A stretch of DNA of 59,284 nt, the filler included, from Platydemus manokwari (taxonomy: Eukaryota), in the NCBI GenBank assembly GCA_037951405.1. It is 5 parts of 5 records of this genome, joined end to end, with 100 filler letters (N's around TTAATTAATTAA, not from the genome) between each part and the next. Parts side by side here need not be neighbours in the genome. Positions count along the whole stretch, not along the records: positions 9,402 to 21,580 come from JBBMOY010268893.1; 4 more parts are not named here. One strand, given 5' to 3'. The notes under the pieces are model-generated. The model did not search any database and had not been told where the DNA came from. It was given only the letters and a program-made list of their open reading frames with translations. Position 1 is the stretch's first letter, and every line of letters starts with the position of its first letter. The position numbers and the translations under genes were made by a program. Positions 9,402 through 21,580 of the stretch are shown here, piece after piece.

Positions 9402-9483
9402 AAAAGGTGGAATTGAACCACTTCGATGTCAACCGACTACAGGTTTGAAGCCTGCACCTTGGACCACCAAGGATCATTCCAGC
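9402..9483 (-). tRNA. tRNA-Sec (anticodon UCA), copy 1; last ~5 nt cut by the contig end
   Basis: The minus strand reads GCTGGAATGATCCTTGGTGGTCCAAGGTGCAGGCTTCAAACCTGTAGTCGGTTGACATCGAAGTGGTTCAATTCCACCTTTT. It has a 6-bp D stem (CCTTGG/CCAAGG), anticodon loop CTTCAAA, a long variable arm and a 4-bp T stem GTGG-TTCAATT-CCAC. This is the eukaryotic 9/4 tRNA-Sec fold. Confidence 0.95.
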
Positions 9484-10805
9484 AAAAATATGTCCTTCAA
9501 TCACTTTCATAAGTTTAATAAATAATTATTTCTCATTTTTAATTTCATTAATTCAGAAATTATCAAATTTCAAATTAAGCAAAAATAAACTACTGATAAA
9601 TTTAATAAGTAACAAATTATTATTACGAAAATATAATATTAATTTACTGAAATTAATATTAATTATAAAATTACGATTAATGCTTTTAATGCTTTTCATG
9701 AAATAAGTTACAGATAATATGTTGATACGATGATGAAACTATTGGCATAATAATCAAATGAACGGAATTCTGGATTGGAATTCAATATCAATAATTCTTC
9801 ACGTATATCTATGGTTGTATTTTTTTAATTTTATTGATTTGATCATCTAAAATTGAAAATGCATAAAAGATCAACAATAAGAAGGAATAATCAATAATAA
9901 ATCAAGATCTTAGAGATTGATAGATGACAGAAATGATTTTCGTTGGCAGCTGTTGTATGTTGTCGCTTCAACCTATAATGCTGACTAAGTTATGAACGTT
10001 TGAGTAATGAACGTTAACTAATGTGATTGATGGACAGCTGATGAACATTGAAATGAATTGAAAACTTAAATTTTTAGCCTTAGATTTTTCAAGTCCTGTA
10101 ATTTTATCTATGTTATTTCTGCCATTTATTTTTTATGGCTGGAATAAGGTTAATGATATCAGGAGAAGAAAAATATATAATTAAATTTGGCAACACATTG
10201 TAGGATACAGTAAACCGTACTTAAAGTCTCTTCAATAGTAGTTAGATATAAAACAAACACAAATACAAAATATGGAACAGAAAAAGTAACAACAAGCAAT
10301 TTATATGGTCCATATCCCGATTACACAAATCAATTAGACACATACAAATTACCATTGAAAGAATTGGAAAATATTCCAGTCGAATTAATTTTCCAGTGAC
10401 ATCTAAATTGAATCAGATCTTCTCTATCTACGCAGCAAAACTGTTCTGGATTACGTACTAAGGTGTTCTTCGGAACATGTAACAAATATACCTGTTTAAT
10501 TTTATTCTTTGGCTTTGTACAACATAAATATTAATAAATATCATTACGCTTATCAAAAGTCATTGAAAGCATAAATAAAATTCGTTATAAAACATGTATT
10601 ATTTTGATTGTTGTATCATTTACGAAACCAATGATTATTGAATATATAAGCCAGGAGAACAAAGTGAAAATGATAAATCATTATTTTTAAATAAGCTGAT
10701 TAAAATTGATATACTAGTTTTCAGACAATTATTTGAGCCTTTCACATAGAACCATTATAAATACAAGCGATTAGTAAATTATCAAATAAAATAACCAGCA
10801 ATAAA

Positions 10806-10852
10806 GTCAGCTGACATTAAAGTGGCCCAATTTTCACATTTCTGTAATTTTT
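10806..10852 (+). pseudogene. Decayed 3' half of tRNA-Sec
   Basis: gtcagctgacattaaagtggcccaattttcacatttctgtaattttt aligns without gaps to the 3' half plus terminator of the intact copy (33/47 identities, counted by eye). Confidence 0.6.
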
Positions 10853-11130
10853 ATGAAATGAAAAGGAGACAAGTCTTGATGAATTAAAATATAATGATTA
10901 TTATAATTTTTAATTAGAGAAATAAAAGAAATAGCAAAGCTTTAACTTTTTAAATCATGGCATTTATGGTAATTTGATATTTTGTAATATTTAATGGATA
11001 TCTTGATTCTTAAAATCAATGAAAGCTTTCGCTTATCTTCTGGTTAAGATTGAAAATTATGTTTGTTAAATATTTAACAACGAATTGCAAATAAACATAA
11101 ATTAGAATTGTTCAAACGACAAGTAAAATT

Positions 11131-11213
11131 CGCTGAAAAAGTGTGAACAAATTAGTCCAAAGTGAACCAATAACAGATTTGAAGTCTGCAAGCTGACAAC
11201 CAAGAATTTACTC
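11131..11213 (-). pseudogene. Decayed tRNA-Sec copy
   Basis: The plus strand cgctgaaaaagtg...aaccaataacagatttgaagtctgcaagctgacaaccaagaat parallels cgctgaaaaggtg...aaccgactacaggtttgaagcctgcaccttggaccaccaaggat. The anticodon loop is kept, the T arm is destroyed, and the 3' flank is also homologous. Confidence 0.75.
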
Positions 11214-11357
11214 AAATAACAACTCAACGTTCTTATATTCAAACGACAAGACGGAATGTGAACTGAATGTAGGAAATACAGCTAGAGAAATTGGAATAAT
11301 CAAAATAGAAACTTGGAGGATTTGATCAATGGAAATATTTAAATATAAAAAAATTTA

Positions 11358-11427
11358 TGGTCCAAAGATCAGTCTTCAAACATGTCGTCAGTTGACATCA
11401 AAGTGGTTCAATTCAATCTTGTCAGTG
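11358..11427 (+). pseudogene. Decayed, inverted tRNA-Sec copy lacking the 5' acceptor/D strand
   Basis: tggtccaaagatcagtcttcaaacatgtcgtcagttgacatcaaagtggttcaattcaatcttgtcagtg is followed by TTTTT and a flank (aaatctaaatta) shared with copy 2. Confidence 0.85.
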
Positions 11428-11569
11428 ATTTTTGCAAGTACATTAAACAAATCTAAATTATAATTATTATCATTTTATGATCATATTTAGTGAAAATAAT
11501 ATTTGGCTTGGAAATAAACATGTACATTCTTTTTAATAATTTAGATTTGAGTAACGGGCATGTAAAAAT

Positions 11570-11656
11570 CGCTGAAAAGGTGGAATTGAACCACTTCGAT
11601 GTCAACCGACTACAGGTTTGAAGCCTGCACCTTGGACCACCAAGGATCATTTCATC
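11570..11656 (-). tRNA. tRNA-Sec (UCA), copy 2, full length 87 nt
   Basis: The body is the same as copy 1 and ends CCACCTTTTCAGCG (discriminator G), followed by a TTTTT Pol III terminator. The 5' strand GATGAAATG gives one A-G mismatch at acceptor pair 2. Confidence 0.93.
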
Positions 11657-11820
11657 AAAAATATGTCCTTTAATTACTTTCATAAGTTCAATAAATAATT
11701 ATTTCGCATTTTTAATTTCATTAATTCAGGAAATTATCAAATTTCAAATTAATCAAAAATAATCTACTTATAAATTTAATAAGTAACAAATTATTATTAG
11801 GAAAATATAATATTAATTTA
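11657..11820 (-). promoter_or_regulatory. Upstream flank of tRNA-Sec, duplicated at 9484-9646; presumed external Pol III promoter
   Basis: About 165 nt upstream of both intact copies is nearly identical. Metazoan tRNA-Sec genes use upstream PSE/TATA elements, but I could not delimit the individual elements in this AT-rich sequence. Confidence 0.5.
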
Positions 11821-14800
11821 TTTTGTAATGATATTGTTACAATTATTTGTTTATGGTTTTCCGATGGTTTTAGTTTGTACTGACCGTTTAAATCGATTCG
11901 CTATTAATAGGACTTCATTTCTACTCTGAAGACAAAGTTACTAACAGATGAATAACGATCGTGGCTAGAGAATGATTATTCTTCTTATTATCATACTCAA
12001 TCCTTCTTTTATAAACACAGTTGTGCTTAAATATTGAATAAATGAAAGGACATCATAATTAACACCAAATAGTTACTGTTGATCACAAATTGTTAAAAAT
12101 CAATAATAATTATTATTGCTATTGGTCACTTATTTCTTAAGAATGTTATTAATATAAAGTATTTGTCCTTAAATATTGTTGAATGATGATCAGAAAAATT
12201 TGCCATGGCCACAAGAATTATTTGCTTAATATTGAACGATTTCCCACAGAGAGATTTACTTTGCTCATCATCGCTTACAGAACAAGATCTTTTAACTCAA
12301 CATTTGAGTTTTATGTTTCAATTTGAATAAATTAGAAGAAAGAATTTGATATTGCATTTATAACTGGGAAATTCAACTGATTGCTTTGTGAATAAATATT
12401 GGTGTGGTGGGCAATTCAAATTATTAAATTATGATTTTTCTTACAATGGGTTATGTGAGTGTTGCGATACTGATTGTTTGTGTATGCTAATTGATTGTAT
12501 GATGTTTAGGATTGGTTTGTAAGTGATTGAGGCTAAAATATTATTTATATTAAAGCTCCATCTCAACAATTTATTGAAATTAATATATTAGAATTTGGAA
12601 AATATAATATTATTAACAAAGAATAAAATTTAGTGATTCATTTAATACAAAAGCCAAGTTTTCCTTTCAAAATCCGAATTTCCCATAACTGAATAATAAC
12701 CATTATAAATTTAAAAAAATTATTAATTTCTAAAATACAAACAAATAATACTCAAATATTAATATAGAAAACACAATAAATGTCACCACAAACCTTTTAA
12801 ATGCAAAATATAATTTATTTTAAGTACAACAGATTATTTGGAGAAAATATTTTTTGATTATAATAAATAAAATGTATATTTCAGGTAACAGAGTGTCACA
12901 ATATCATATATAAATTATTATTATTATAAAGGTGAAACAAAGTGTTTTGCCATTTCAAAAATACCAAAAAACGTTGAAGGACAATGTGATTGGATTTATC
13001 AGTAGATTCAAGTGTGTGTGGGAGCATTCAAACCTTGGTTATTATTGTGATGTCCAGTAATAGTATTAAAGTATCTGTTACGAGCTTTATTGACGTGACT
13101 ATTAGATAATTCTGAACCAGTATCACAATCTGATGAGACAAAGACTTGGTTTTATTTTTGATTTGTTATAAGAGTATAAGCTTGATTCAGTTAAAATGGA
13201 CTGAACTATCTTTACATTGAAATTAATGGAAACAAACTACTTATAAATTTAATAAGTAAAATATTAATATAAATATATTAAATAACAAAATTCAATTTAT
13301 TCTTAACATGAAGTCGTTGTACTACTGTTGAACTGACAATGCACAACAATTTTTCACAATATTTGAGATTTTGAAAAATATAGCCAATGGTAAATTCTTC
13401 TTTTAAATATTTGTGAAAAATAAATCATGTAGTTGTTATTTAATTTGTTGAGTGGATTACTTAAAAATGACTCCAACGTCTTAAGTAACGGAACGGATGT
13501 CAATGCAGTATCCCGAAGCGATTATGTAATCACATTGTTACGAAATAGTGACTGCATATAGTGTATTAAGAAAATCGATAAAAAATAAAAAGTGACGATT
13601 TGCTTTCGTTAATTGTTAGATTTTGTTAACTTTATAATGATTTTTATTGATTTTGTAAATGGAACAATTATATCGACTTTATCATGAAATTCTTAAGTGT
13701 TTTTTTGATAATGGCTTCAATTAGTAAGGAAAAATTACAATTTTAACAAAAATAATGAATAATCCTCATATTTAATGACACTTGGTAACGTTGGAAACTT
13801 TTACTGTATATATTTATACACATTCTATACAACATCTTCAAAATAATGTTTTTATCAAACGGAACTATGACAGCAATATAACATGCTAATAATGAAATGG
13901 GACTCAACAATAATCAAAAGAAAATGGAAACCACTGCCCATCAGGCAAATGAGAAAAAACTCAGTGCAAAAAATCTCTGACTGTCAGGTCTGTCAAGGTT
14001 TACACCGTAAAAACAGGACAATAACCTGAATGAAATCGATCAGTGATACGAAGCCTACGCACGTTACTTCTCTGAAACTGATGATATCGATTCAGAAGAA
14101 TATCAAGCCTCTCTTAATTTCATGACTTTTGATGAAGCAACCCACACAAATTGAAAGAATATTTGATGATAAAGAAACATCTGTGACAGACTATTTAATC
14201 GCAATAGAGGATAAATCATTGGCTAGCTGGTCTAGCTATCCAGTATAGCTATTTTCATTATAAGATCTGTGTGTGCTATGTAATTTGAACAAAGATTATT
14301 TACAAGTTTTTGGTCCAAACAATAATTATAAAAAAATATTATAAAATATTATTATATGCTAATGAATTGCTAATACTCATCAAAATCTTATGAAAACTTA
14401 TGAAACTATGAATTGTGAGATAAGAGAGAGTTGAATTCTAAATGAAACTAACTGGAAATGTCAAACTTTTCGACGGTGGAAACAGAGTCGATAAACCATT
14501 TAAAAAATTTGATTTCTGGGACAGAGAAAATGTTGAAATTGTGGAGATGAAACCAGCACAACAGTTATAAAATAAGCACAAATAGATTTTGTAGGGATTA
14601 ACTCCAGCCATAAAAGCAGGAAAATCTTTATCTGGTTTGTCGTTATACGAGACGGGTTCATGCTCGACTCATGGCCAACAGAATCGATATTTAGTGATCT
14701 ATCTAATAGTAACTGAGAATAGAACTTTGAATCAATCATAAGTTGATGGTGAATTTCATGGGTCTCGATTACTTTTACTTGTCACATCCTAACAGTAAAT

Positions 14801-16954
14801 AATACTAAATACGATTGAAGTCTATCTTTTCCAAAATTATGAGAGTGAAGATATTAAATTTGCGCATCGTGATATATTCATCAAATTAAAGAAACAAATC
14901 AGAAGGAAATCCGAATGATATCCCACTAAAATCAGATAACAGATAGCTATCTATCATACTTCAAAAAAATACAAAACGCAAAACGTAAGTTGGTTAGCTT
15001 ATTTATAAATAAACATCAGGTTTTCAGTAGAAACATTGGTATTGGTGAAATATGTAGGATCTTGGATTCATTGCCTGCTAACTCAAAAAATCATTTCATT
15101 GTCAAGTTTATCTATGAGTCTGATTATGAGTTATTCAAAAGAAGAGAGCTCTCAGACAATTCCAAGGGATAAAAGATTACGATTGCATAATCCGAAAAAA
15201 AAGAATCAATAAGAAATCCTTGTAATGTTCTATTCAAAATGCGACACTTTCTATTGACTTCACTTGCGCACAACGCGCTTTCTATTTTGCTCCATGACCT
15301 TTGATTTTCGAATAAGGTAAACAAAAAATGATCATTACATGGACCCAAGAACTATATGAGATCTATTGTTTCTGGAATTTTAACTTGTGTTTAATCGAAC
15401 TAGTTAAGAAGATTTTACGTCTTTCTCGCAATTCTGATATACCCTATTTGTATTACGATACTATTTAAGGTGGTACTGACTTATATGATTTACTTTATGG
15501 ATTTAATCTACAAAAGATAATCCAAGCCTTCAAGATTAGATTTAATTCTCCACGATATACTCACATGGTCTTTAATATAAGCAGTCTGCCCAAGACAACC
15601 AAGTTAATTTATTTCACCCTTTGGCAGTTTGATCCAGTGTCTATACGGGAGTTTCAGATTGCCTTAATACTTTGAATTACTTTAAGATTAGGTACGTGAT
15701 TATCACAATGTTTGACCATGAGAATAACAAAATTCATATCGTTTAAAAGATTCATATTGAACGCACATACTTATGAATGATGATTCAAACCGTCAATTGA
15801 TCGTACCTCTTAATTTGAATCATGTAGTCAGCGTTTCTAAATGATTGACAGTGACACAATGATTTCTAGAGACCTCTCAATGCATTCATCTATTTAATCC
15901 ACCTGTTAAGAAGTCAGTGAGTCGATTCGAAACCTGCTGAAATGACATAGTGATTCCAATTTAGAAGTGAATTTGAAGATAGTCTTCAAAGCAGTTATCA
16001 AATACTTATTTGACTCAGATTATTTGATCGGCAATGCGGATAATTGTAATCAATCAATATGTTTAGAATATTATTAAATCAAACAAATCATCCCCAGTAG
16101 ATCATTTCAATCAATCTGATCTCCACATAACCAAAATGTAACTCAACCATCTAGAATAGCAACTCCAATCAATTTACAAAAAGTAATTATGCAGTCTCTT
16201 TGTCTTTTAGTTTCTAAAATTTATGAAGATATTACCATTAACCTCTAATGTTCTTTGCTCATTACTCACCTTGGAGAGCAGCGATTGAGATTTCGATAAC
16301 TGTGGATAACTCTCAAGTCTAGAAAGCTTCAATACCGTCAAAGTAATTATATTTAATGGTAATAACTGGAAATAGGTTTAATTGGTCCATTAGGATTGTA
16401 AATAGAATTATAAACGTTCGATTGAAGTTAAGTAAAAAGGCATCAACTATAAAATTCTAAAAATGCAAGCTAAAAGCAAGAGTTTATCTAATTTCAATGA
16501 TTAGGTTTTGCTTTGAAATTTTATTAAGAGATGAAGATACACTTAATGTATAATAAAGGTTATATCATATAAAATAGTAGGAACATCATTTGGGAATCAT
16601 AATTGAATTATATTAATCAAATTGAGTAGCCATTTTAGAATGAATTTTAGGAATTACGTATTAATAATATGATTAATAATTTGTAGAATTTGGTTCTTAT
16701 TCGGGACATCTTAAAATTATTATTAATACTTGAGTTATTACTTAAAAATTCAATGTCATTGATTTTATGACACTTATTTGAACCGATCCTTATTAGTTGG
16801 AGATATATTTTATCTTAAATTTTGCTTATTAATAATATTATAACTAGAAATTATAAAATAAGCGTCAATATAAATAAAACAATGATTTGAAAATGTATTA
16901 CAAATTCCCCTACTTCTCACCAATCAAATCACTGTATTACAATCATAAATACCA

Positions 16955-19257
16955 ATGTTTCATCACAATCACTCAATGATGATGTCCATTGTGAAACAAT
17001 GCTTTTCTGAATCCACAATGCATGGACTGCCTAATATGGCTAATCGAAAATCGAGAACTGTTAAAATCGTGTGGGTTATTTTAACAATGGCTGCCATTGG
17101 TGGATTGATTGCACATTCAACGGTGTTGGGAATGAAATATTTGGAAGAATCAGTATCGATAAGTATTATTCCGAAATCAATACCTTTCGATCAACCAGAT
17201 ATTTTACTTTGTCCGAAAAGAATATTTGCTTTAGAATATGTTCGACGTCCTCCTCCGAATGAATTTCAATTCATCAACGAGACTTCTCAACAAATGCTAT
17301 TTATTAACAAAACTCAAGTTCTTCTACCAGCACAATTAGAGATGTTTTTACAAAATATTGACATTTGGAAAGTCTTTAAAGCATTTTCTTATCGTCAAAG
17401 CCAACTATTTATTAGTATTGAATGCACGATTCAACAAAAAACAACAATACTCAACAATCTTACATTATTACCAGAATATGTTTATCCACATTATTTATGC
17501 TATCGATTAACACAAGACATTTGTTCTATGAGATTTCCAACATCTAAATTAGTTCTCAAATTATACATTCATGATTATTTTATTAATCGACCAAGTGCAA
17601 TCAAAGACATTGACGAACTTCTTAATCAGATTGATTTTCCAGTTTCTAATGGTATGAATATCTATTTTCTCAATCGAAACGAGAACAGACAAGATAGTAG
17701 CAAAAAAGTAACTGTTTCTGGAGGTACTGAAATGGATATTAGTATCCAATCATTACAATATCGATTTTTGAATCGTAAAAATTTCAAATGTCAAGAAAAA
17801 GATACACTGATCAAATTTAGGAACTTTCATGCCTTAGATAACGTTCAATATGGTGTAGACTTTTTGAATAGTTCTACTTGTTACTTGAATGCATACTGTG
17901 ATTCAATCTTTCAAAGTTGGAAATGTAAATTCACGATGTGTCCTACTCAGGCTCAGCAACCAATGGATTTTCCTTATTGCTACGCATTCACCAATATTTT
18001 GTCGTTTTTCAAAATGTTGCAAGAGAACCAAAATAAGGTACCCATTGATGACACCACGGTTTATAATCAATGCACACAAGCACAACCATGTTCCTATGTT
18101 GAATATGTCACTACAGCAAATAGTGCAGAAATACGACCAAATTTGTTTGTAAACAATAATTTAAATAGTTTGAGAAGATTAGCAACGGATGAACAACCGG
18201 GAATCAAAGAATTTTGGACGAGTTATGAAAGTAATAATACAAGAATCAATCAATGGAAGAGAAATATGATAATGGTTTGTATTTTATGTGGCTTTTACTG
18301 ATTTTATAAATAATATTATAAATTTTATGATCTGTAATCTCTGTCCAGTTTTAATTTTGCCAATAGATGACTGAACAAATCAATGAAAAGTTTGACTAAT
18401 TAGTTAGTTAATTTCTATAATGAATATTATTTACCTTTACATTGAAAATAGCATATTTAATCCATCTTTTAGATTCAATTAGTTATTCTATTTTGATCAC
18501 AAAACCTTTAATTCATTTATACATACTAGTTTAATAACTTTTTAGCAGTGCATGTTTGTTGTGCATTTTGATTACGAATATTCCAATAAGAGAACTCTGG
18601 CTACTTATCGCTATTTTGTATTTCTCATTCAAAGAATTTCTCAGGGCTGAAGAAATATAATAATACTAAAAAAAATTTCTCATTTTATTATTATTTTGGT
18701 TTTTTATTTGTTTAGAATAAGATAATCCTTCACAATTTGCGACTTTTTTAATCTGACTAGTCAATGCTCGGTAATAAGAAATGCTAAAGTTGATTTGGAT
18801 TTTAAATTTATGAAAAAATGTAAAATAAGAAAGTTCTTGGAATATTTTCACTGGTATCGCATTTCCAATTTATTTCAATGAGCAAATCTGGAATTTATAA
18901 ATGAGGATTTCATATAATGTTATGACATAAACAGCTTTTATGAAAAATTTCATTTTTCGTTACTTATTAATACCGATTCAATAAAGTCTTAATAAATTAA
19001 TTCTCTTCGTTTTACAGATTCACATTTATCCAGGAGAGTTTCAAAGCACACAATTTGTCGAAAGCTTCAGTTATGATTTACGAAATCTTTTTACGGATGT
19101 TGGTGGTATTCTGGGATTCTATATTGGAGCCAGTATCTTGACTGTGTTTGAGCTTTACAATATCGTCCATGAATTGCTAACAATCGGTGTTATTTATCGC
19201 ATGATCAGACAGAGGAAAAAGCTCCACAACGAAGATCAATCAAATCTGATTGAATAA
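16955..19257 (+). CDS. DEG/ENaC/ASIC-family amiloride-sensitive channel subunit; exons 16955-18274, 19018-19257; ~519 aa
   Basis: It has the pre-TM1 FSESTMHGL (HG) motif, TM1, FDQPDILLCP and a Cys-rich ectodomain (QPCSYVEY). Exon 2, missed by the ORF track, encodes YDLRNLFTDVGGILGFYIGASILTVFEL (TM2 with the GAS filter). The intron is phase-0 GT-AG. Confidence 0.93.
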
Positions 19258-19389
19258 TAAACTGTGATGTTCGAGAGATATTTTCATCATTTTATTCTAT
19301 TGTTTCGATTTTCCTTTATTTTCGATTATTAACTTGAAAATTATTTCACATCATTCTTTATTGAATGTTTTATTAGATTTGTTTGATGA

Positions 19390-19870
19390 CTTTATATTGA
19401 CTCCTTTCCTGGATAAATGTAATATTTTCATTTATTTATTTATTTTTGTATAAACTTCCTTGATAATAAATATTTCTTTTGAAATTTTTATTTCTTATTT
19501 AAAATTCTTACGCAATCCTAAGCTTTGAATTTTGATTTTTCATTTAAATTAAATCATCACTTTAACATTTTCTGGATTTTTTCTAGCTTTAACTGGACTT
19601 GCACCAATACCAGAATGAATTTTATAATTATATTTATTTACAACACTCTGTTACGAATTATTATTCCATTTCTGATTTCCAACAGCTGTAAAATGTTTCC
19701 AAGTGATATTTTTCAAAGTTTTAATAATTTTTTCACCAAATGCAGCTTTTGCTTCGTTTTCAGTACGATATTAAACTATGTTATTTTCGTCACAAAACTT
19801 TTAAAAATATTTACTTCTAATGTCTGATTCTTTATCAAACCAATTTTTTGTTTCAGATTTTTTAGGCATT
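19390..19870 (-). mobile_element. Decayed retroviral-like integrase of a Maverick/Polinton
   Basis: YRTENEAKAAFGEKIIKTLKNITWKHFTAVGNQKW...*...YNYKIHSGIGASPVKA matches the c-integrase pattern KAxxxERxxRTLK...W...YNxxxHSxIxxxP, with stops and frameshifts. Confidence 0.8.
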
Positions 19871-20319
19871 ACAATAATATCTGCACTGTGAGTATTATCA
19901 TTATTAGATATCTTTACTTTTAAAAATTTCTAAACTTGTTTCTTTTCATTATGTAATTCTTTGACTAATAAGTACTCGTCTCATATAGAGAAGTTATCTT
20001 TGTATTTTTATTTTGTATATTTAATTTCTTCACTTAATGGGAAGTTACCTTTTTGATTACCATCACCTGGTACATCAAATATTTTCTTTATATCTAAATC
20101 TTTTTATTTATAATGCTTGGAAAAAGAGATTAAAATAAAATAAAGTATGAAGATATAATTACTTATCTGTGGATTGTAAAGACAGCAGGAATTTCTTCAC
20201 AATAACCAGGACGTCTTAAATATATAATAGAACTCAGAAATATAGCAGAAATAAATCAGTATATGGCTTTTCAATGGGATCATCAGCCACTTCAAGGTCA
20301 ATGGCTATATATTAATAAT

Positions 20320-21400
20320 AATCATCACAATCCAATAGAATTATTTTATGAATTAAAAAAGTTATTAGCAGATAAAAAGGGAAGATGTAATAATGTTCAC
20401 AATTAATTATATAATATTTAAACAAAATTAAATAGATTAGGATATATAAATAAAGAAAATATAAAATTCTTAAAAAGTATTTTCGATGAGCACTTGGTGT
20501 ACCCACGAAAAGTATTTACCTTAAATTTTTATAAAAAAAAGAATTCAAAAATTAGATTGAAACATTTATAAATTTAAACATGAAATTAAAAAGACCATTA
20601 ATTTGTTATAAACCCATAGCCACTGCAATAACCGATTGAAATGAATCTAAAGATATTATTTTTAAATCTCAATGGACTTCGAATCCTGTAGATAATACTA
20701 ATAGATTTTTAAGACATGATATCGAAGTAGAATTTTAAAAAATCTAAATAAAATAATGTCCAACTTGATCATCATATAACTTTGGAAAATAATTTCTTTC
20801 CAAATTTATTTGACTCAATGAAATTAACATTAGGAACACATGAAATTGAAAATATTTAAAAAAATTCCATGAGAAATATCTGCTATACTAAATTTTATAT
20901 TATTAAATCAATTTAATGAAAGAACTGGTGAATTACCTTCATGTATTCAAGATAAAACTAAAGATCTATATAATAATAACAATGGGTTTAGAAGACGAAA
21001 GGCTGTTTGTAATTTATAAAACAAGTTTACAGGACAATTACCATTAAAATACTTATTTGGATCTTTAGTAAGTTTTAATACATCATTAATTACGTTTTAG
21101 AAAGTCTTAACAGATCATTATTTTGGAAGATGATTAAATTAACTTTAAAAAGATATATAAATGATAAAGAAAATATTTTACGAGACGAAAAGCGAAACAA
21201 AATTAACGATTAAATCTTTAGAATTTTGTTCGCCAGGATTAGTTTAAATCCTGAAAGTGAACTTGAACTCACTGAAAGATTGAAAACGGATTATTTATTT
21301 TAGTTATAGACTTTCAAATTTAGTTGAAATTCCAGAATTACAAACAGTTACTTGGCAAGTAGCTTTATTACAAAACAAACCGAGATAAATGTTAAGATCC
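20320..21400 (+). mobile_element. Decayed Maverick/Polinton genes: conserved small-ORF motif and major capsid protein remnants
   Basis: NPIELFYELKKLLADKKGRCNNVHN* near 20330 resembles the Polinton DPNELxxRLxLL..aGNN motif. NNGFRRRKA...FTGQLPLKYLFG at ~20980-21060 resembles the Polinton capsid. Both are heavily disrupted and lie next to the integrase relic. Confidence 0.6.
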
Positions 21401-21580
21401 TGATATTAGTTATGTTAAAAATATTTAAAATTAATTCAAAATATTGGTGATAAATATATAAAATTATTAGAAAAAAGACTAAATAACAGTAATTATCTGG
21501 TTCGGCAATTTGTGGATGCCATCCCAAAAAAACCGGTCATCTTTTGAATCAAAGAACGAATCGAGCCACTTTTTGATGCC

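What the first reader, a model, noticed from the sequence alone, without database searches (positions are those of the whole stretch)
9402..11820. A birth-and-death array of selenocysteine tRNA genes
Seen: within 2.3 kb there are two near-identical tRNA-Sec(UCA) genes (9483-9402 and 11656-11570, both minus). There are also at least three decayed copies in alternating orientation (10806-10852 +, 11131-11213 -, 11358-11427 +) and possibly a fainter one at ~10000-10105. The contig breaks inside copy 1, so the array may continue. Copies of very different ages share 3' flanks, which points to repeated DNA-level inverted and tandem duplication rather than retroposition. The two better-preserved relics keep the CTTCAAA anticodon loop. 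Known: tRNA-Sec is usually a single-copy gene in animals, is limiting for selenoprotein synthesis, and is often missed by standard tRNA scans. Inference: ongoing amplification and turnover of the UGA-recoding tRNA, perhaps dosage-related.
Basis: partly seen in the sequence, partly recalled or inferred. Interest (0 to 1): 0.75.

Follow-up and report, generated by a model that had tools for sequence, protein, structure and literature searches.

The report
Selenocysteine tRNA gene family with dead copies
This AT-rich animal genome (probably an arthropod) carries a small family of selenocysteine tRNA genes instead of the usual single gene, and the window shows two intact-looking genes with three decayed copies between them, all made by repeated DNA duplication.

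Summary
Rfam's tRNA-Sec model finds two genes on the minus strand. Copy 2 (11570-11656) scores 73.4 bits. Copy 1 (9402-9483) is cut by the contig start and scores 63.9 bits. They share a 5' flank of about 165 nt at 95-96% identity.

Three dead copies lie between them, at 10805-10853 (+), 11093-11214 (-) and 11354-11465 (+). Two score far above shuffled sequence. The third is marginal alone, but two paralogous contigs hold a relic at the same relative place. The suggested relic at about 10000-10105 is not supported.

Genome-wide (911 Mb, 1.99 million contigs), nine places on six contigs keep an intact anticodon arm. Several contigs break inside the tRNA. There are also truncated stubs, older relics and kb-scale paralogy at 70-92% identity. 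The flanks are low-copy, so this is neither a SINE nor retroposition.

The tRNA bodies stay identical while their flanks differ by 8-18%. Seven stem pairs show compensatory changes between sequence classes. SepSecS exons and glutathione peroxidase genes with TGA at the catalytic site are present.

Best reading: a birth-and-death tRNA-Sec family, with several copies probably functional. Multi-copy tRNA-Sec is already reported in a spider, a lancelet and a diatom, so this is a new member of a known kind. Expression, exact copy number and any dosage role are untested.

The parts
9402..9483 (-). tRNA-Sec(UCA) copy 1. Its 5' end reads GCTGGAATG. The last 5 nt of the 87-nt gene are missing because the contig starts inside it.
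   Evidence: RF01852 63.9 bits, model positions 1-87, cut at 3'. Identical over the shared part to the copies on C637622 and C1384104.
9484..9646 (-). 5' flank of copy 1, the family's shared upstream unit.
   Evidence: 96% identical to 11657-11820. Homology to copy 2 stops here: 9647-9952 matches C1756475 and C1532967, not the region upstream of copy 2.
9586..9612 (-). 27-nt near-palindromic block at about -129 to -103 of copy 1 (7-nt arms TACTTAT/ATAAGTA).
   Evidence: It is the best conserved part of the 5' flank across 10 copies. With <=2 mismatches it occurs 13 times in the genome; 11 of these lie on contigs with tRNA-Sec copies, stubs or relics, and two lie on C1716399 and C1391449.
10805..10853 (+). 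Relic A: the oldest decayed copy, covering the 3' half of the tRNA and the T-run.
   Evidence: Local alignment score 31, equal to the null maximum. Relics at the same relative place on C662652 and C1223099.
11093..11214 (-). Relic B: a decayed, nearly full-length copy plus 3' flank (tRNA part about 11131-11214). It keeps CTTCAAA.
   Evidence: Local alignment score 58 against a null maximum of 31. nhmmer E 2.7e-26, though relic B is itself in the profile. The same relic is present on C1756475 524-643.
11354..11465 (+). Relic C: a 5'-truncated decayed copy (from about tRNA nt 15-18) plus 3' flank. It lies tail-to-tail with copy 2 across a 74-nt spacer.
   Evidence: Inverted repeat I1, 104-nt arms, 82% complementary. 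Local alignment score 113. nhmmer E 2.2e-26, though relic C is itself in the profile.
11536..11569 (-). 3' flank of copy 2, with the T5 terminator directly after G73.
   Evidence: Shared with relics B and C and with C662652 and C1223099.
11570..11656 (-). tRNA-Sec(UCA) copy 2, complete at 87 nt. Its 5' end reads GATGAAATG, with an A2/G mismatch in the acceptor stem.
   Evidence: RF01852 73.4 bits. ARAGORN tRNA-SeC(tca). Pair table.
11657..11820 (-). 5' flank of copy 2. The palindromic block lies at 11760-11786.
13217..13285 (-). Solo fragment of the family's 5' flank (block at 13233-13259), with no tRNA remnant detected beside it.
   Evidence: 78-90% identity to the flank in several copies. 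Block with 1 mismatch.

Best explanation
The left end of this contig is part of a lineage-specific multigene family of selenocysteine tRNA genes, built by repeated DNA-level segmental duplication in both direct and inverted orientation. A core unit of about 290 nt has been copied many times, sometimes together with kilobases of surrounding DNA. The core comprises about 165 nt of upstream flank, the 87-nt tRNA, a T-run terminator and about 35 nt of 3' flank. Some copies are kept identical in the tRNA body by purifying selection and/or gene conversion. These are most likely working RNA polymerase III genes, whose product would be serylated, converted to Sec-tRNA(Sec) and used to read UGA in selenoprotein mRNAs. 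Other copies were truncated at the duplication or have decayed into relics. In the window, copy 1 looks fully competent as far as it is assembled. Copy 2 carries one broken acceptor pair and may be a weakened or newly dying gene. Relics A, B and C are dead. Shown here: the copies, their ages, the shared flanks, the structure and the covariation. Inferred: transcription, aminoacylation and any dosage benefit.
For: The canonical eukaryotic tRNA-Sec fold is present: 9-bp acceptor, 6-bp D stem with 4-nt loop, UCA anticodon, 5-bp variable stem, 4-bp T stem and G73. RF01852 scores above the gathering value for six places in the genome: C1485002, C662652, C1078699, both copies on C268893, and one on C1270162 that ARAGORN calls tRNA-Ser. 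Nine places on six contigs keep an intact anticodon arm, with zero hits for the reversed control. The tRNA bodies are identical (73/73, 76/76) between copies whose 5' flanks are only 82-92% identical. The chance of no difference in 73 nt at 18% divergence is 5e-7. Seven stem pairs change on both sides between sequence classes, 95% of cells are paired, and no shuffle reaches the observed values. 5' and 3' flanks are shared, and there is kb-scale paralogy at 70-92%. Copies 1 and 2 are not alleles: their homology ends about 165 nt upstream, and each then continues into a different sequence that has its own paralogs. An independent contig set from one public run spans 9793-11588 without a difference. 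Its variant flanks each have roughly single-copy depth, and summed depth over tRNA plus flank is 64-116 against 10-16 for unique DNA. The Sec pathway is in use: SepSecS exons are present, and GPx-family exons carry one TGA, which in the one I translated sits at the catalytic NVASK-U-G position.
Against: There are no expression data: the only public run found is not on record as RNA (its kind is unrecorded) and is held as contigs. The 3' ends of the four GCTGGAATG-type copies are not assembled, so their acceptor stems are inferred. Copy 2 has an A2/G mismatch. The assembly is extremely fragmented and breaks inside the repeat, so order, linkage and exact copy number are unknown. U6 genes in the assembly are very heterogeneous, which raises the possibility that more than one organism is present. 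Identical tRNA bodies could reflect gene conversion from a single working gene rather than function in every copy.
Confidence: 0.8

Rival explanations
1. Only one gene works, for example the canonical GCCCGGATG-type copy on C1485002. The whole GCTGGAATG family, including both window copies, is then a set of silent pseudogenes kept similar by recent duplication or gene conversion.
For: C1485002 has the top RF01852 score (79.8 bits) and a TATA-like motif at about -30. Copy 2 has a broken acceptor pair. Many multi-copy tRNA-Sec predictions in other genomes are non-functional (PMC5330540).
Against: The family differs from the canonical copy by compensated changes in the acceptor, D and variable stems. 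This implies that at least its founder evolved under structural constraint. The tRNA bodies are invariant while the flanks diverged by 8-25%. True relics in the same loci did decay.
Confidence: 0.12
2. The multiplicity is an assembly artefact, caused by haplotypes or pooled individuals assembled separately, or by mis-joins through a repeat.
For: There are 1.99 million contigs for 911 Mb. Contigs break inside the tRNA. SepSecS exons also appear twice. C1532967 is 97% identical to 9669-9859 and may be an allele.
Against: Copies occur together on single contigs: two plus three relics here, two plus a stub on C1384104, two on C1078699. Flanks differ by 8-30% and continue into unrelated sequence. 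An independent contig set supports 9549-11588. There are at least eight distinct 5' junctions.
Confidence: 0.04
3. It is a tRNA-Sec-derived mobile element (SINE or MITE-like) rather than gene duplication.
For: The core unit has fairly sharp edges and occurs in different contexts. Solo fragments of its flank exist (13217-13285; C1716399).
Against: A 285-nt query finds only 17 matches genome-wide. The neighbouring 1.7-2.1 kb is low-copy and co-duplicated. The shared sequence includes the upstream flank, which retroposed tRNA copies lack. I saw no A-rich tail or target-site duplication.
Confidence: 0.03
4. The divergent sequence classes (C1485002, and the tandem pair on the 43%-GC contig C1078699) come from another organism in the sample. 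This would not touch the window's own array.
For: U6 genes in the assembly are very diverse. C1078699 has 43% GC against 22-27% for family contigs. Contaminant tRNA-Sec genes are documented in assemblies (PMC5330540).
Against: C1078699 shares derived acceptor, D-stem and variable-arm states with the family and is intermediate between it and the canonical copy. C1485002 has AT-rich flanks like this genome, and weak similarity (77% over 44 nt, E 0.003) to the family's upstream block.
Confidence: 0.15

Closest known systems
Multi-copy tRNA-Sec genomes reported with Secmarker (Parasteatoda tepidariorum, Branchiostoma floridae: 4 copies; Fragilariopsis cylindrus: 11 predictions; several arthropods with 2) - PMC5330540
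   Same: Several non-identical G73 tRNA-Sec genes in one genome, with compensatory stem changes relative to the top-scoring copy. Their significance is unclear.
   Different: Here there are at least nine copies with an intact anticodon arm, which would exceed the four reported for any animal. The genomic anatomy is also visible: clustered direct and inverted copies, shared promoter-side flank, stubs and relics of graded age.
Human TRNAU1 and its pseudogene TRNAU2 (also rabbit and hamster pseudogenes) - as described in PMC5330540
   Same: A working tRNA-Sec gene accompanied by decayed copies.
   Different: That paper concludes the human pseudogene arose by retrotransposition and was 'dead on arrival'. 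The copies here carry both flanks and arose by DNA duplication.
Zebrafish pair of identical tRNA-Sec genes (cited in PMC5330540)
   Same: More than one apparently functional copy in an animal.
   Different: The zebrafish has two identical genes only, with no series of diverged and dead copies.
Birth-and-death or concerted evolution of clustered tRNA and other multigene families (general concept, from my own knowledge)
   Same: Duplication, homogenisation of coding bodies, and loss by decay.
   Different: Here it applies to the one tRNA that is normally single-copy.

Membership tests
Eukaryotic tRNA-Sec (Rfam RF01852) | Covariance-model score above the gathering threshold (47 bits) | tested here: met
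   Copy 2 scores 73.4 bits and copy 1 (truncated) 63.9 bits. Other contigs score 75.9-79.8 bits. The relics score nothing at E<=10.
Eukaryotic tRNA-Sec (Rfam RF01852) | UCA anticodon in a 7-nt loop on a 6-bp stem | tested here: met
   CUUCAAA loop. All six anticodon-stem pairs are invariant in the five intact copies.
Eukaryotic tRNA-Sec (Rfam RF01852) | 9/4 fold (9-bp acceptor plus 4-bp T stem), 6-bp D stem with 4-nt loop, long variable arm | tested here: met
   30 pairs, 95% of cells paired. One non-standard pair at acceptor position 8 occurs in all copies. Copy 2 has an extra A2/G mismatch.
Eukaryotic tRNA-Sec (Rfam RF01852) | G73 discriminator (held essential in PMC5330540) | tested here: met
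   G follows the acceptor stem in copy 2, C662652, C1078699 and C1485002. It is not assembled for copy 1.
Eukaryotic tRNA-Sec (Rfam RF01852) | Upstream (type-3-like) Pol III promoter plus internal B box and T-run terminator | tested here: inconclusive
   A B-box-like GGTTCAATTCC and a T5 run are present. A conserved upstream flank exists. No motif is shared with this genome's U6 upstream regions, and AT-richness makes TATA calls meaningless.
Eukaryotic tRNA-Sec (Rfam RF01852) | Serylation, then conversion by PSTK and SepSecS, and use at UGA | not testable with these tools
   Only the context could be checked: SepSecS exons and GPx with TGA at the catalytic site are present in the assembly.
Birth-and-death multigene family | Paralogs of graded age, with intact genes and pseudogenes side by side | tested here: met
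   Identity tiers run from 96% through 90-93%, about 80% and about 71%, down to relics.
Birth-and-death multigene family | Gains and losses differing between related species | not testable with these tools
tRNA-derived SINE or retroposed tRNA pseudogene | High copy number, no shared upstream flank, A-rich or simple tail, target-site duplications | tested here: not met
   17 matches genome-wide. The upstream flank is shared. Neighbouring DNA is low-copy and co-duplicated.

The most novel reading that the evidence does not exclude
This animal expresses several structurally compensated tRNA-Sec isodecoder classes from the largest tRNA-Sec gene family yet seen in an animal (at least nine copies). 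Transcription is driven through a family-specific palindromic upstream element at about -130 to -104. The amplification is adaptive, through dosage or division of labour between isodecoders, rather than neutral churn.
Probability: 0.2. Interest if true: 0.6.

Novelty: new member of a known kind. Interest (0 to 1): 0.4.

Why it matters
tRNA-Sec is normally a single, essential gene and is thought to limit selenoprotein synthesis. A genome in which it has multiplied, diverged with compensatory changes and left a trail of dead copies is a natural experiment on three questions. Which parts of the tRNA and its promoter are constrained? Does copy number matter? How does a Pol III gene with an upstream promoter duplicate successfully? 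On the practical side, such families break short-read assemblies, and standard tRNA scanners under- or over-call them.

Tried and rejected
- **Relic at about 10000-10105:** no signal by local alignment against shuffles or by a family nhmmer profile. The stretch is merely paralogous to C1756475 92-388.
- **Relics against RF01852 at E<=10:** no hit.
- **Shared promoter motif with U6 genes of the same genome:** none seen. The U6 set is itself heterogeneous.
- **Tree of the 5' flanks to order the duplications:** unresolved. It separates only an old pair (C662652, C1223099) from eight younger copies.
- **Organism identity:** only 'probably an arthropod' could be reached, from the neighbouring ASC/pickpocket-like channel gene.
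- **Read depth and expression:** the single public run found is held as contigs only, so depth is a rough guide and expression could not be examined.
- **Masked sequence:** one U6 locus on contig C3 is masked with N and was left alone.
- **Human sequence:** I did not take any fetched contig for human, and I compared nothing with human sequence by tool. That the body of C1485002 resembles the vertebrate tRNA-Sec is from memory only.

Full report
**The sequence**

The piece (window 9402-21580, contig C268893 of a 911-Mb assembly in 1.99 million contigs) has 27.5% GC and contains no N.

Rfam's tRNA-Sec model RF01852 (gathering score 47) finds two minus-strand genes:
- Copy 2, 11571-11656, scores 73.4 bits over the full model.
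- Copy 1, 9402-9483, scores 63.9 bits and is cut at its 3' end by the contig start.

ARAGORN calls 11570-11656 tRNA-SeC with anticodon tca. The two copies share the tRNA and about 165 nt of 5' flank at 96% identity (9402-9646 against 11575-11820).

**The relics**

I aligned copy 2 plus its 34-nt 3' flank locally to 9647-11535 on both strands, and compared the scores with 200 dinucleotide shuffles (null mean 21.4, maximum 31).

| Relic | Place and strand | Score | Verdict |
|---|---|---|---|
| C | 11358-11461 (+) | 113 | clear |
| B | 11097-11207 (-) | 58 | clear |
| A | 10805-10853 (+) | 31 | only equals the null maximum |

- A family nhmmer profile places relic C at 11354-11465 (E 2e-26) and relic B at 11093-11214 (E 3e-26). 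Both relics are members of that profile, so these E-values are not independent evidence. Relic A alone reaches only E 0.13.
- Relic A is nonetheless real. Two paralogous contigs carry a relic at the same relative place, directly before sequence homologous to window 10847-11008. These are C662652 3818-3897 (E 5e-10) and C1223099 708-766 (E 0.016).
- None of the relics scores with RF01852 at E<=10. They are dead copies.
- Relics B and C keep the CTTCAAA loop. All three keep a T-run after the former 3' end.
- Relic C and copy 2 lie tail-to-tail as a 104-nt inverted repeat (82% complementary) around a 74-nt spacer.

**The genome-wide picture**

A 22-nt anticodon-arm pattern with up to 2 mismatches occurs at nine places, against zero for the reversed control:
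- C268893, twice;
- C637622, once;
- C662652, once;
- C1078699, twice, 443 nt apart;
- C1384104, twice, one at each contig end facing outward;
- C1485002, once.

A 285-nt query (flank, tRNA and 3' flank) finds only 17 matches. These include three 'stubs', in which the 5' flank is followed by only the first 11 nt of the tRNA (C1756475, C90222, and one inside C1384104).

Four copies sit at contig ends, as copy 1 does. The tRNA body therefore behaves as an assembly-breaking repeat.

Only three family-type 3' ends are assembled. The other copies may sit in tail-to-tail pairs whose short spacers were not assembled. That is my inference. It fits one 'opposite strands' joint seen in the public run's contigs.

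**Segmental duplication, not a mobile element and not alleles**

- Paralogy extends well beyond the tRNA. C1384104 matches window 11646-12154 and 13296-13930 at 75-85%. C1756475 matches 9473-9952, 9965-10288 and 10962-11348 at 72-83%, in a rearranged order. C662652 and C1223099 match at 67-80%.
- The neighbouring 1.7 kb and 2.1 kb are low-copy in the genome.
- Copies 1 and 2 cannot be alleles. Their homology stops about 165 nt upstream, and each then continues into a different sequence with its own paralogs.
- The one public run holding this DNA is stored as independently built contigs. One contig covers 9793-11588 without a difference. The variant flanks have depths of about 10-21, like unique DNA at 10-16. 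Summed depth over tRNA plus flank is 64-116. The tool warns that summed contig depth is not a copy number. I use it only as rough agreement with the eight copies that are at least 90% identical in the assembly.

**Evidence of constraint**

- The tRNA bodies are identical (73/73, 76/76) between copies whose 5' flanks are 82-92% identical. C662652 differs from copy 1 at 1 of 82 positions, although its flank is about 75-80% identical. The chance of no difference in 73 nt at 18% divergence is 5e-7.
- I tested five intact copies against the RF01852 structure. 95% of cells pair. Seven pairs change on both sides: three in the acceptor stem, two in the D stem and two in the variable stem. No shuffle or slid register reaches these values.
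- The copies fall into a graded series by their 5' acceptor strand:
  - GCCCGGATG (C1485002, 79.8 bits);
  - GCTGGGATG (C1078699, 75.9 bits);
  - GCTGGAATG (copy 1, C637622, C1384104);
  - GCTGAAATG (C662652, 78.4 bits);
  - GATGAAATG (copy 2, 73.4 bits), which has an unpaired A2/G.
- All complete copies have G73, which PMC5330540 regards as essential.

**The Sec pathway in the assembly**

SepSecS exons are present. Four GPx-family matches contain one TGA. In the one I translated, the TGA lies in the active-site motif NVASK-U-G.

**Interpretation**

This is a birth-and-death family of tRNA-Sec genes made by repeated direct and inverted DNA duplication. Several copies are maintained by selection and/or gene conversion, and others are dying or dead.

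- Copy 1 is probably functional, although its 3' end is not assembled.
- Copy 2 may be impaired.
- Transcription, charging and any dosage effect are inferred, not shown.

**Organism**

The contig also carries an intronless 448-aa ASC/DEG/ENaC channel gene at 16955-18301 (Pfam PF00858, E 7e-17). Its nearest protein-atlas clusters are arthropod pickpocket/Nach-like proteins. The organism is therefore probably an arthropod. I could not be more precise.

**Comparison with the literature**

PMC5330540 reports genomes with two to four tRNA-Sec genes carrying compensatory changes, among them a spider, a scorpion, crustaceans and a lancelet. It also reports eleven predictions in a diatom, and a retroposed human pseudogene.

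The present case is therefore a new member of a known kind. It is notable for the number of copies and for showing the duplication anatomy.

**Limits**

- The assembly is highly fragmented.
- The sample may contain other organisms: the U6 genes are very diverse.
- No RNA data were found.

Noticed in passing
window 9586-9612, 11760-11786, 13233-13259: A 27-nt near-palindrome (arms TACTTAT/ATAAGTA, 7-nt spacer) at about -130 to -104 is the best conserved part of the family's 5' flank. With <=2 mismatches it occurs 13 times in the genome; 11 of these are on contigs with tRNA-Sec copies, stubs or relics, and two are on C1716399 and C1391449. It is 27/27 even where the tRNA has half decayed (C1223099), and it occurs as solo fragments. 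It could be an upstream promoter or activator element, or a recombination hotspot.
   Followed up: partly
L030 (C1756475) 1387-1397; L032 (C90222) 874-884; L047 (C1384104) 2377-2387; window 11354-11360: Three truncated copies end after tRNA nt 11, immediately before the palindromic D arm (CCTTGG-TGGT-CCAAGG). Relic C begins at about nt 15-18. The breakpoints cluster at this hairpin, which hints at template switching during inverted duplication.
   Followed up: no
window 16955-18301 (+): Intronless 448-aa ORF of the amiloride-sensitive sodium channel family (PF00858, E 7e-17). The closest database proteins are 40-46% identical, and the nearest atlas clusters are arthropod Nach/pickpocket-like proteins.
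   Followed up: partly
L003 (C1078699) 1-71 and 419-505: Two tRNA-Sec copies in tandem, 443 nt apart, on a 520-nt contig of 43% GC. This is much richer in GC than the other family contigs. The sequence is intermediate between the canonical copy and the family, and has one C/A mismatch in the D stem.
   Followed up: partly
L049-L068 (U6 loci of G000); L055 (C3) partly N: U6 snRNA hits in the assembly have very different 5' ends and upstream regions. Either there are many U6 variants or pseudogenes, or the sample holds more than one organism. One locus is masked with N and was left alone.
   Followed up: no
L073 (C1532967) 1-255: This contig is 97% identical to window 9669-9859, then jumps to sequence like window 11762-11844. 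It is either another rearranged copy or an allele with a different junction.
   Followed up: partly
L092 (C63457) 1501-1680 and three other contigs: Glutathione peroxidase exons with an in-frame TGA. In L092 the TGA sits at the catalytic position. At least one, and probably several, Sec-GPx genes are therefore present in the assembly.
   Followed up: partly
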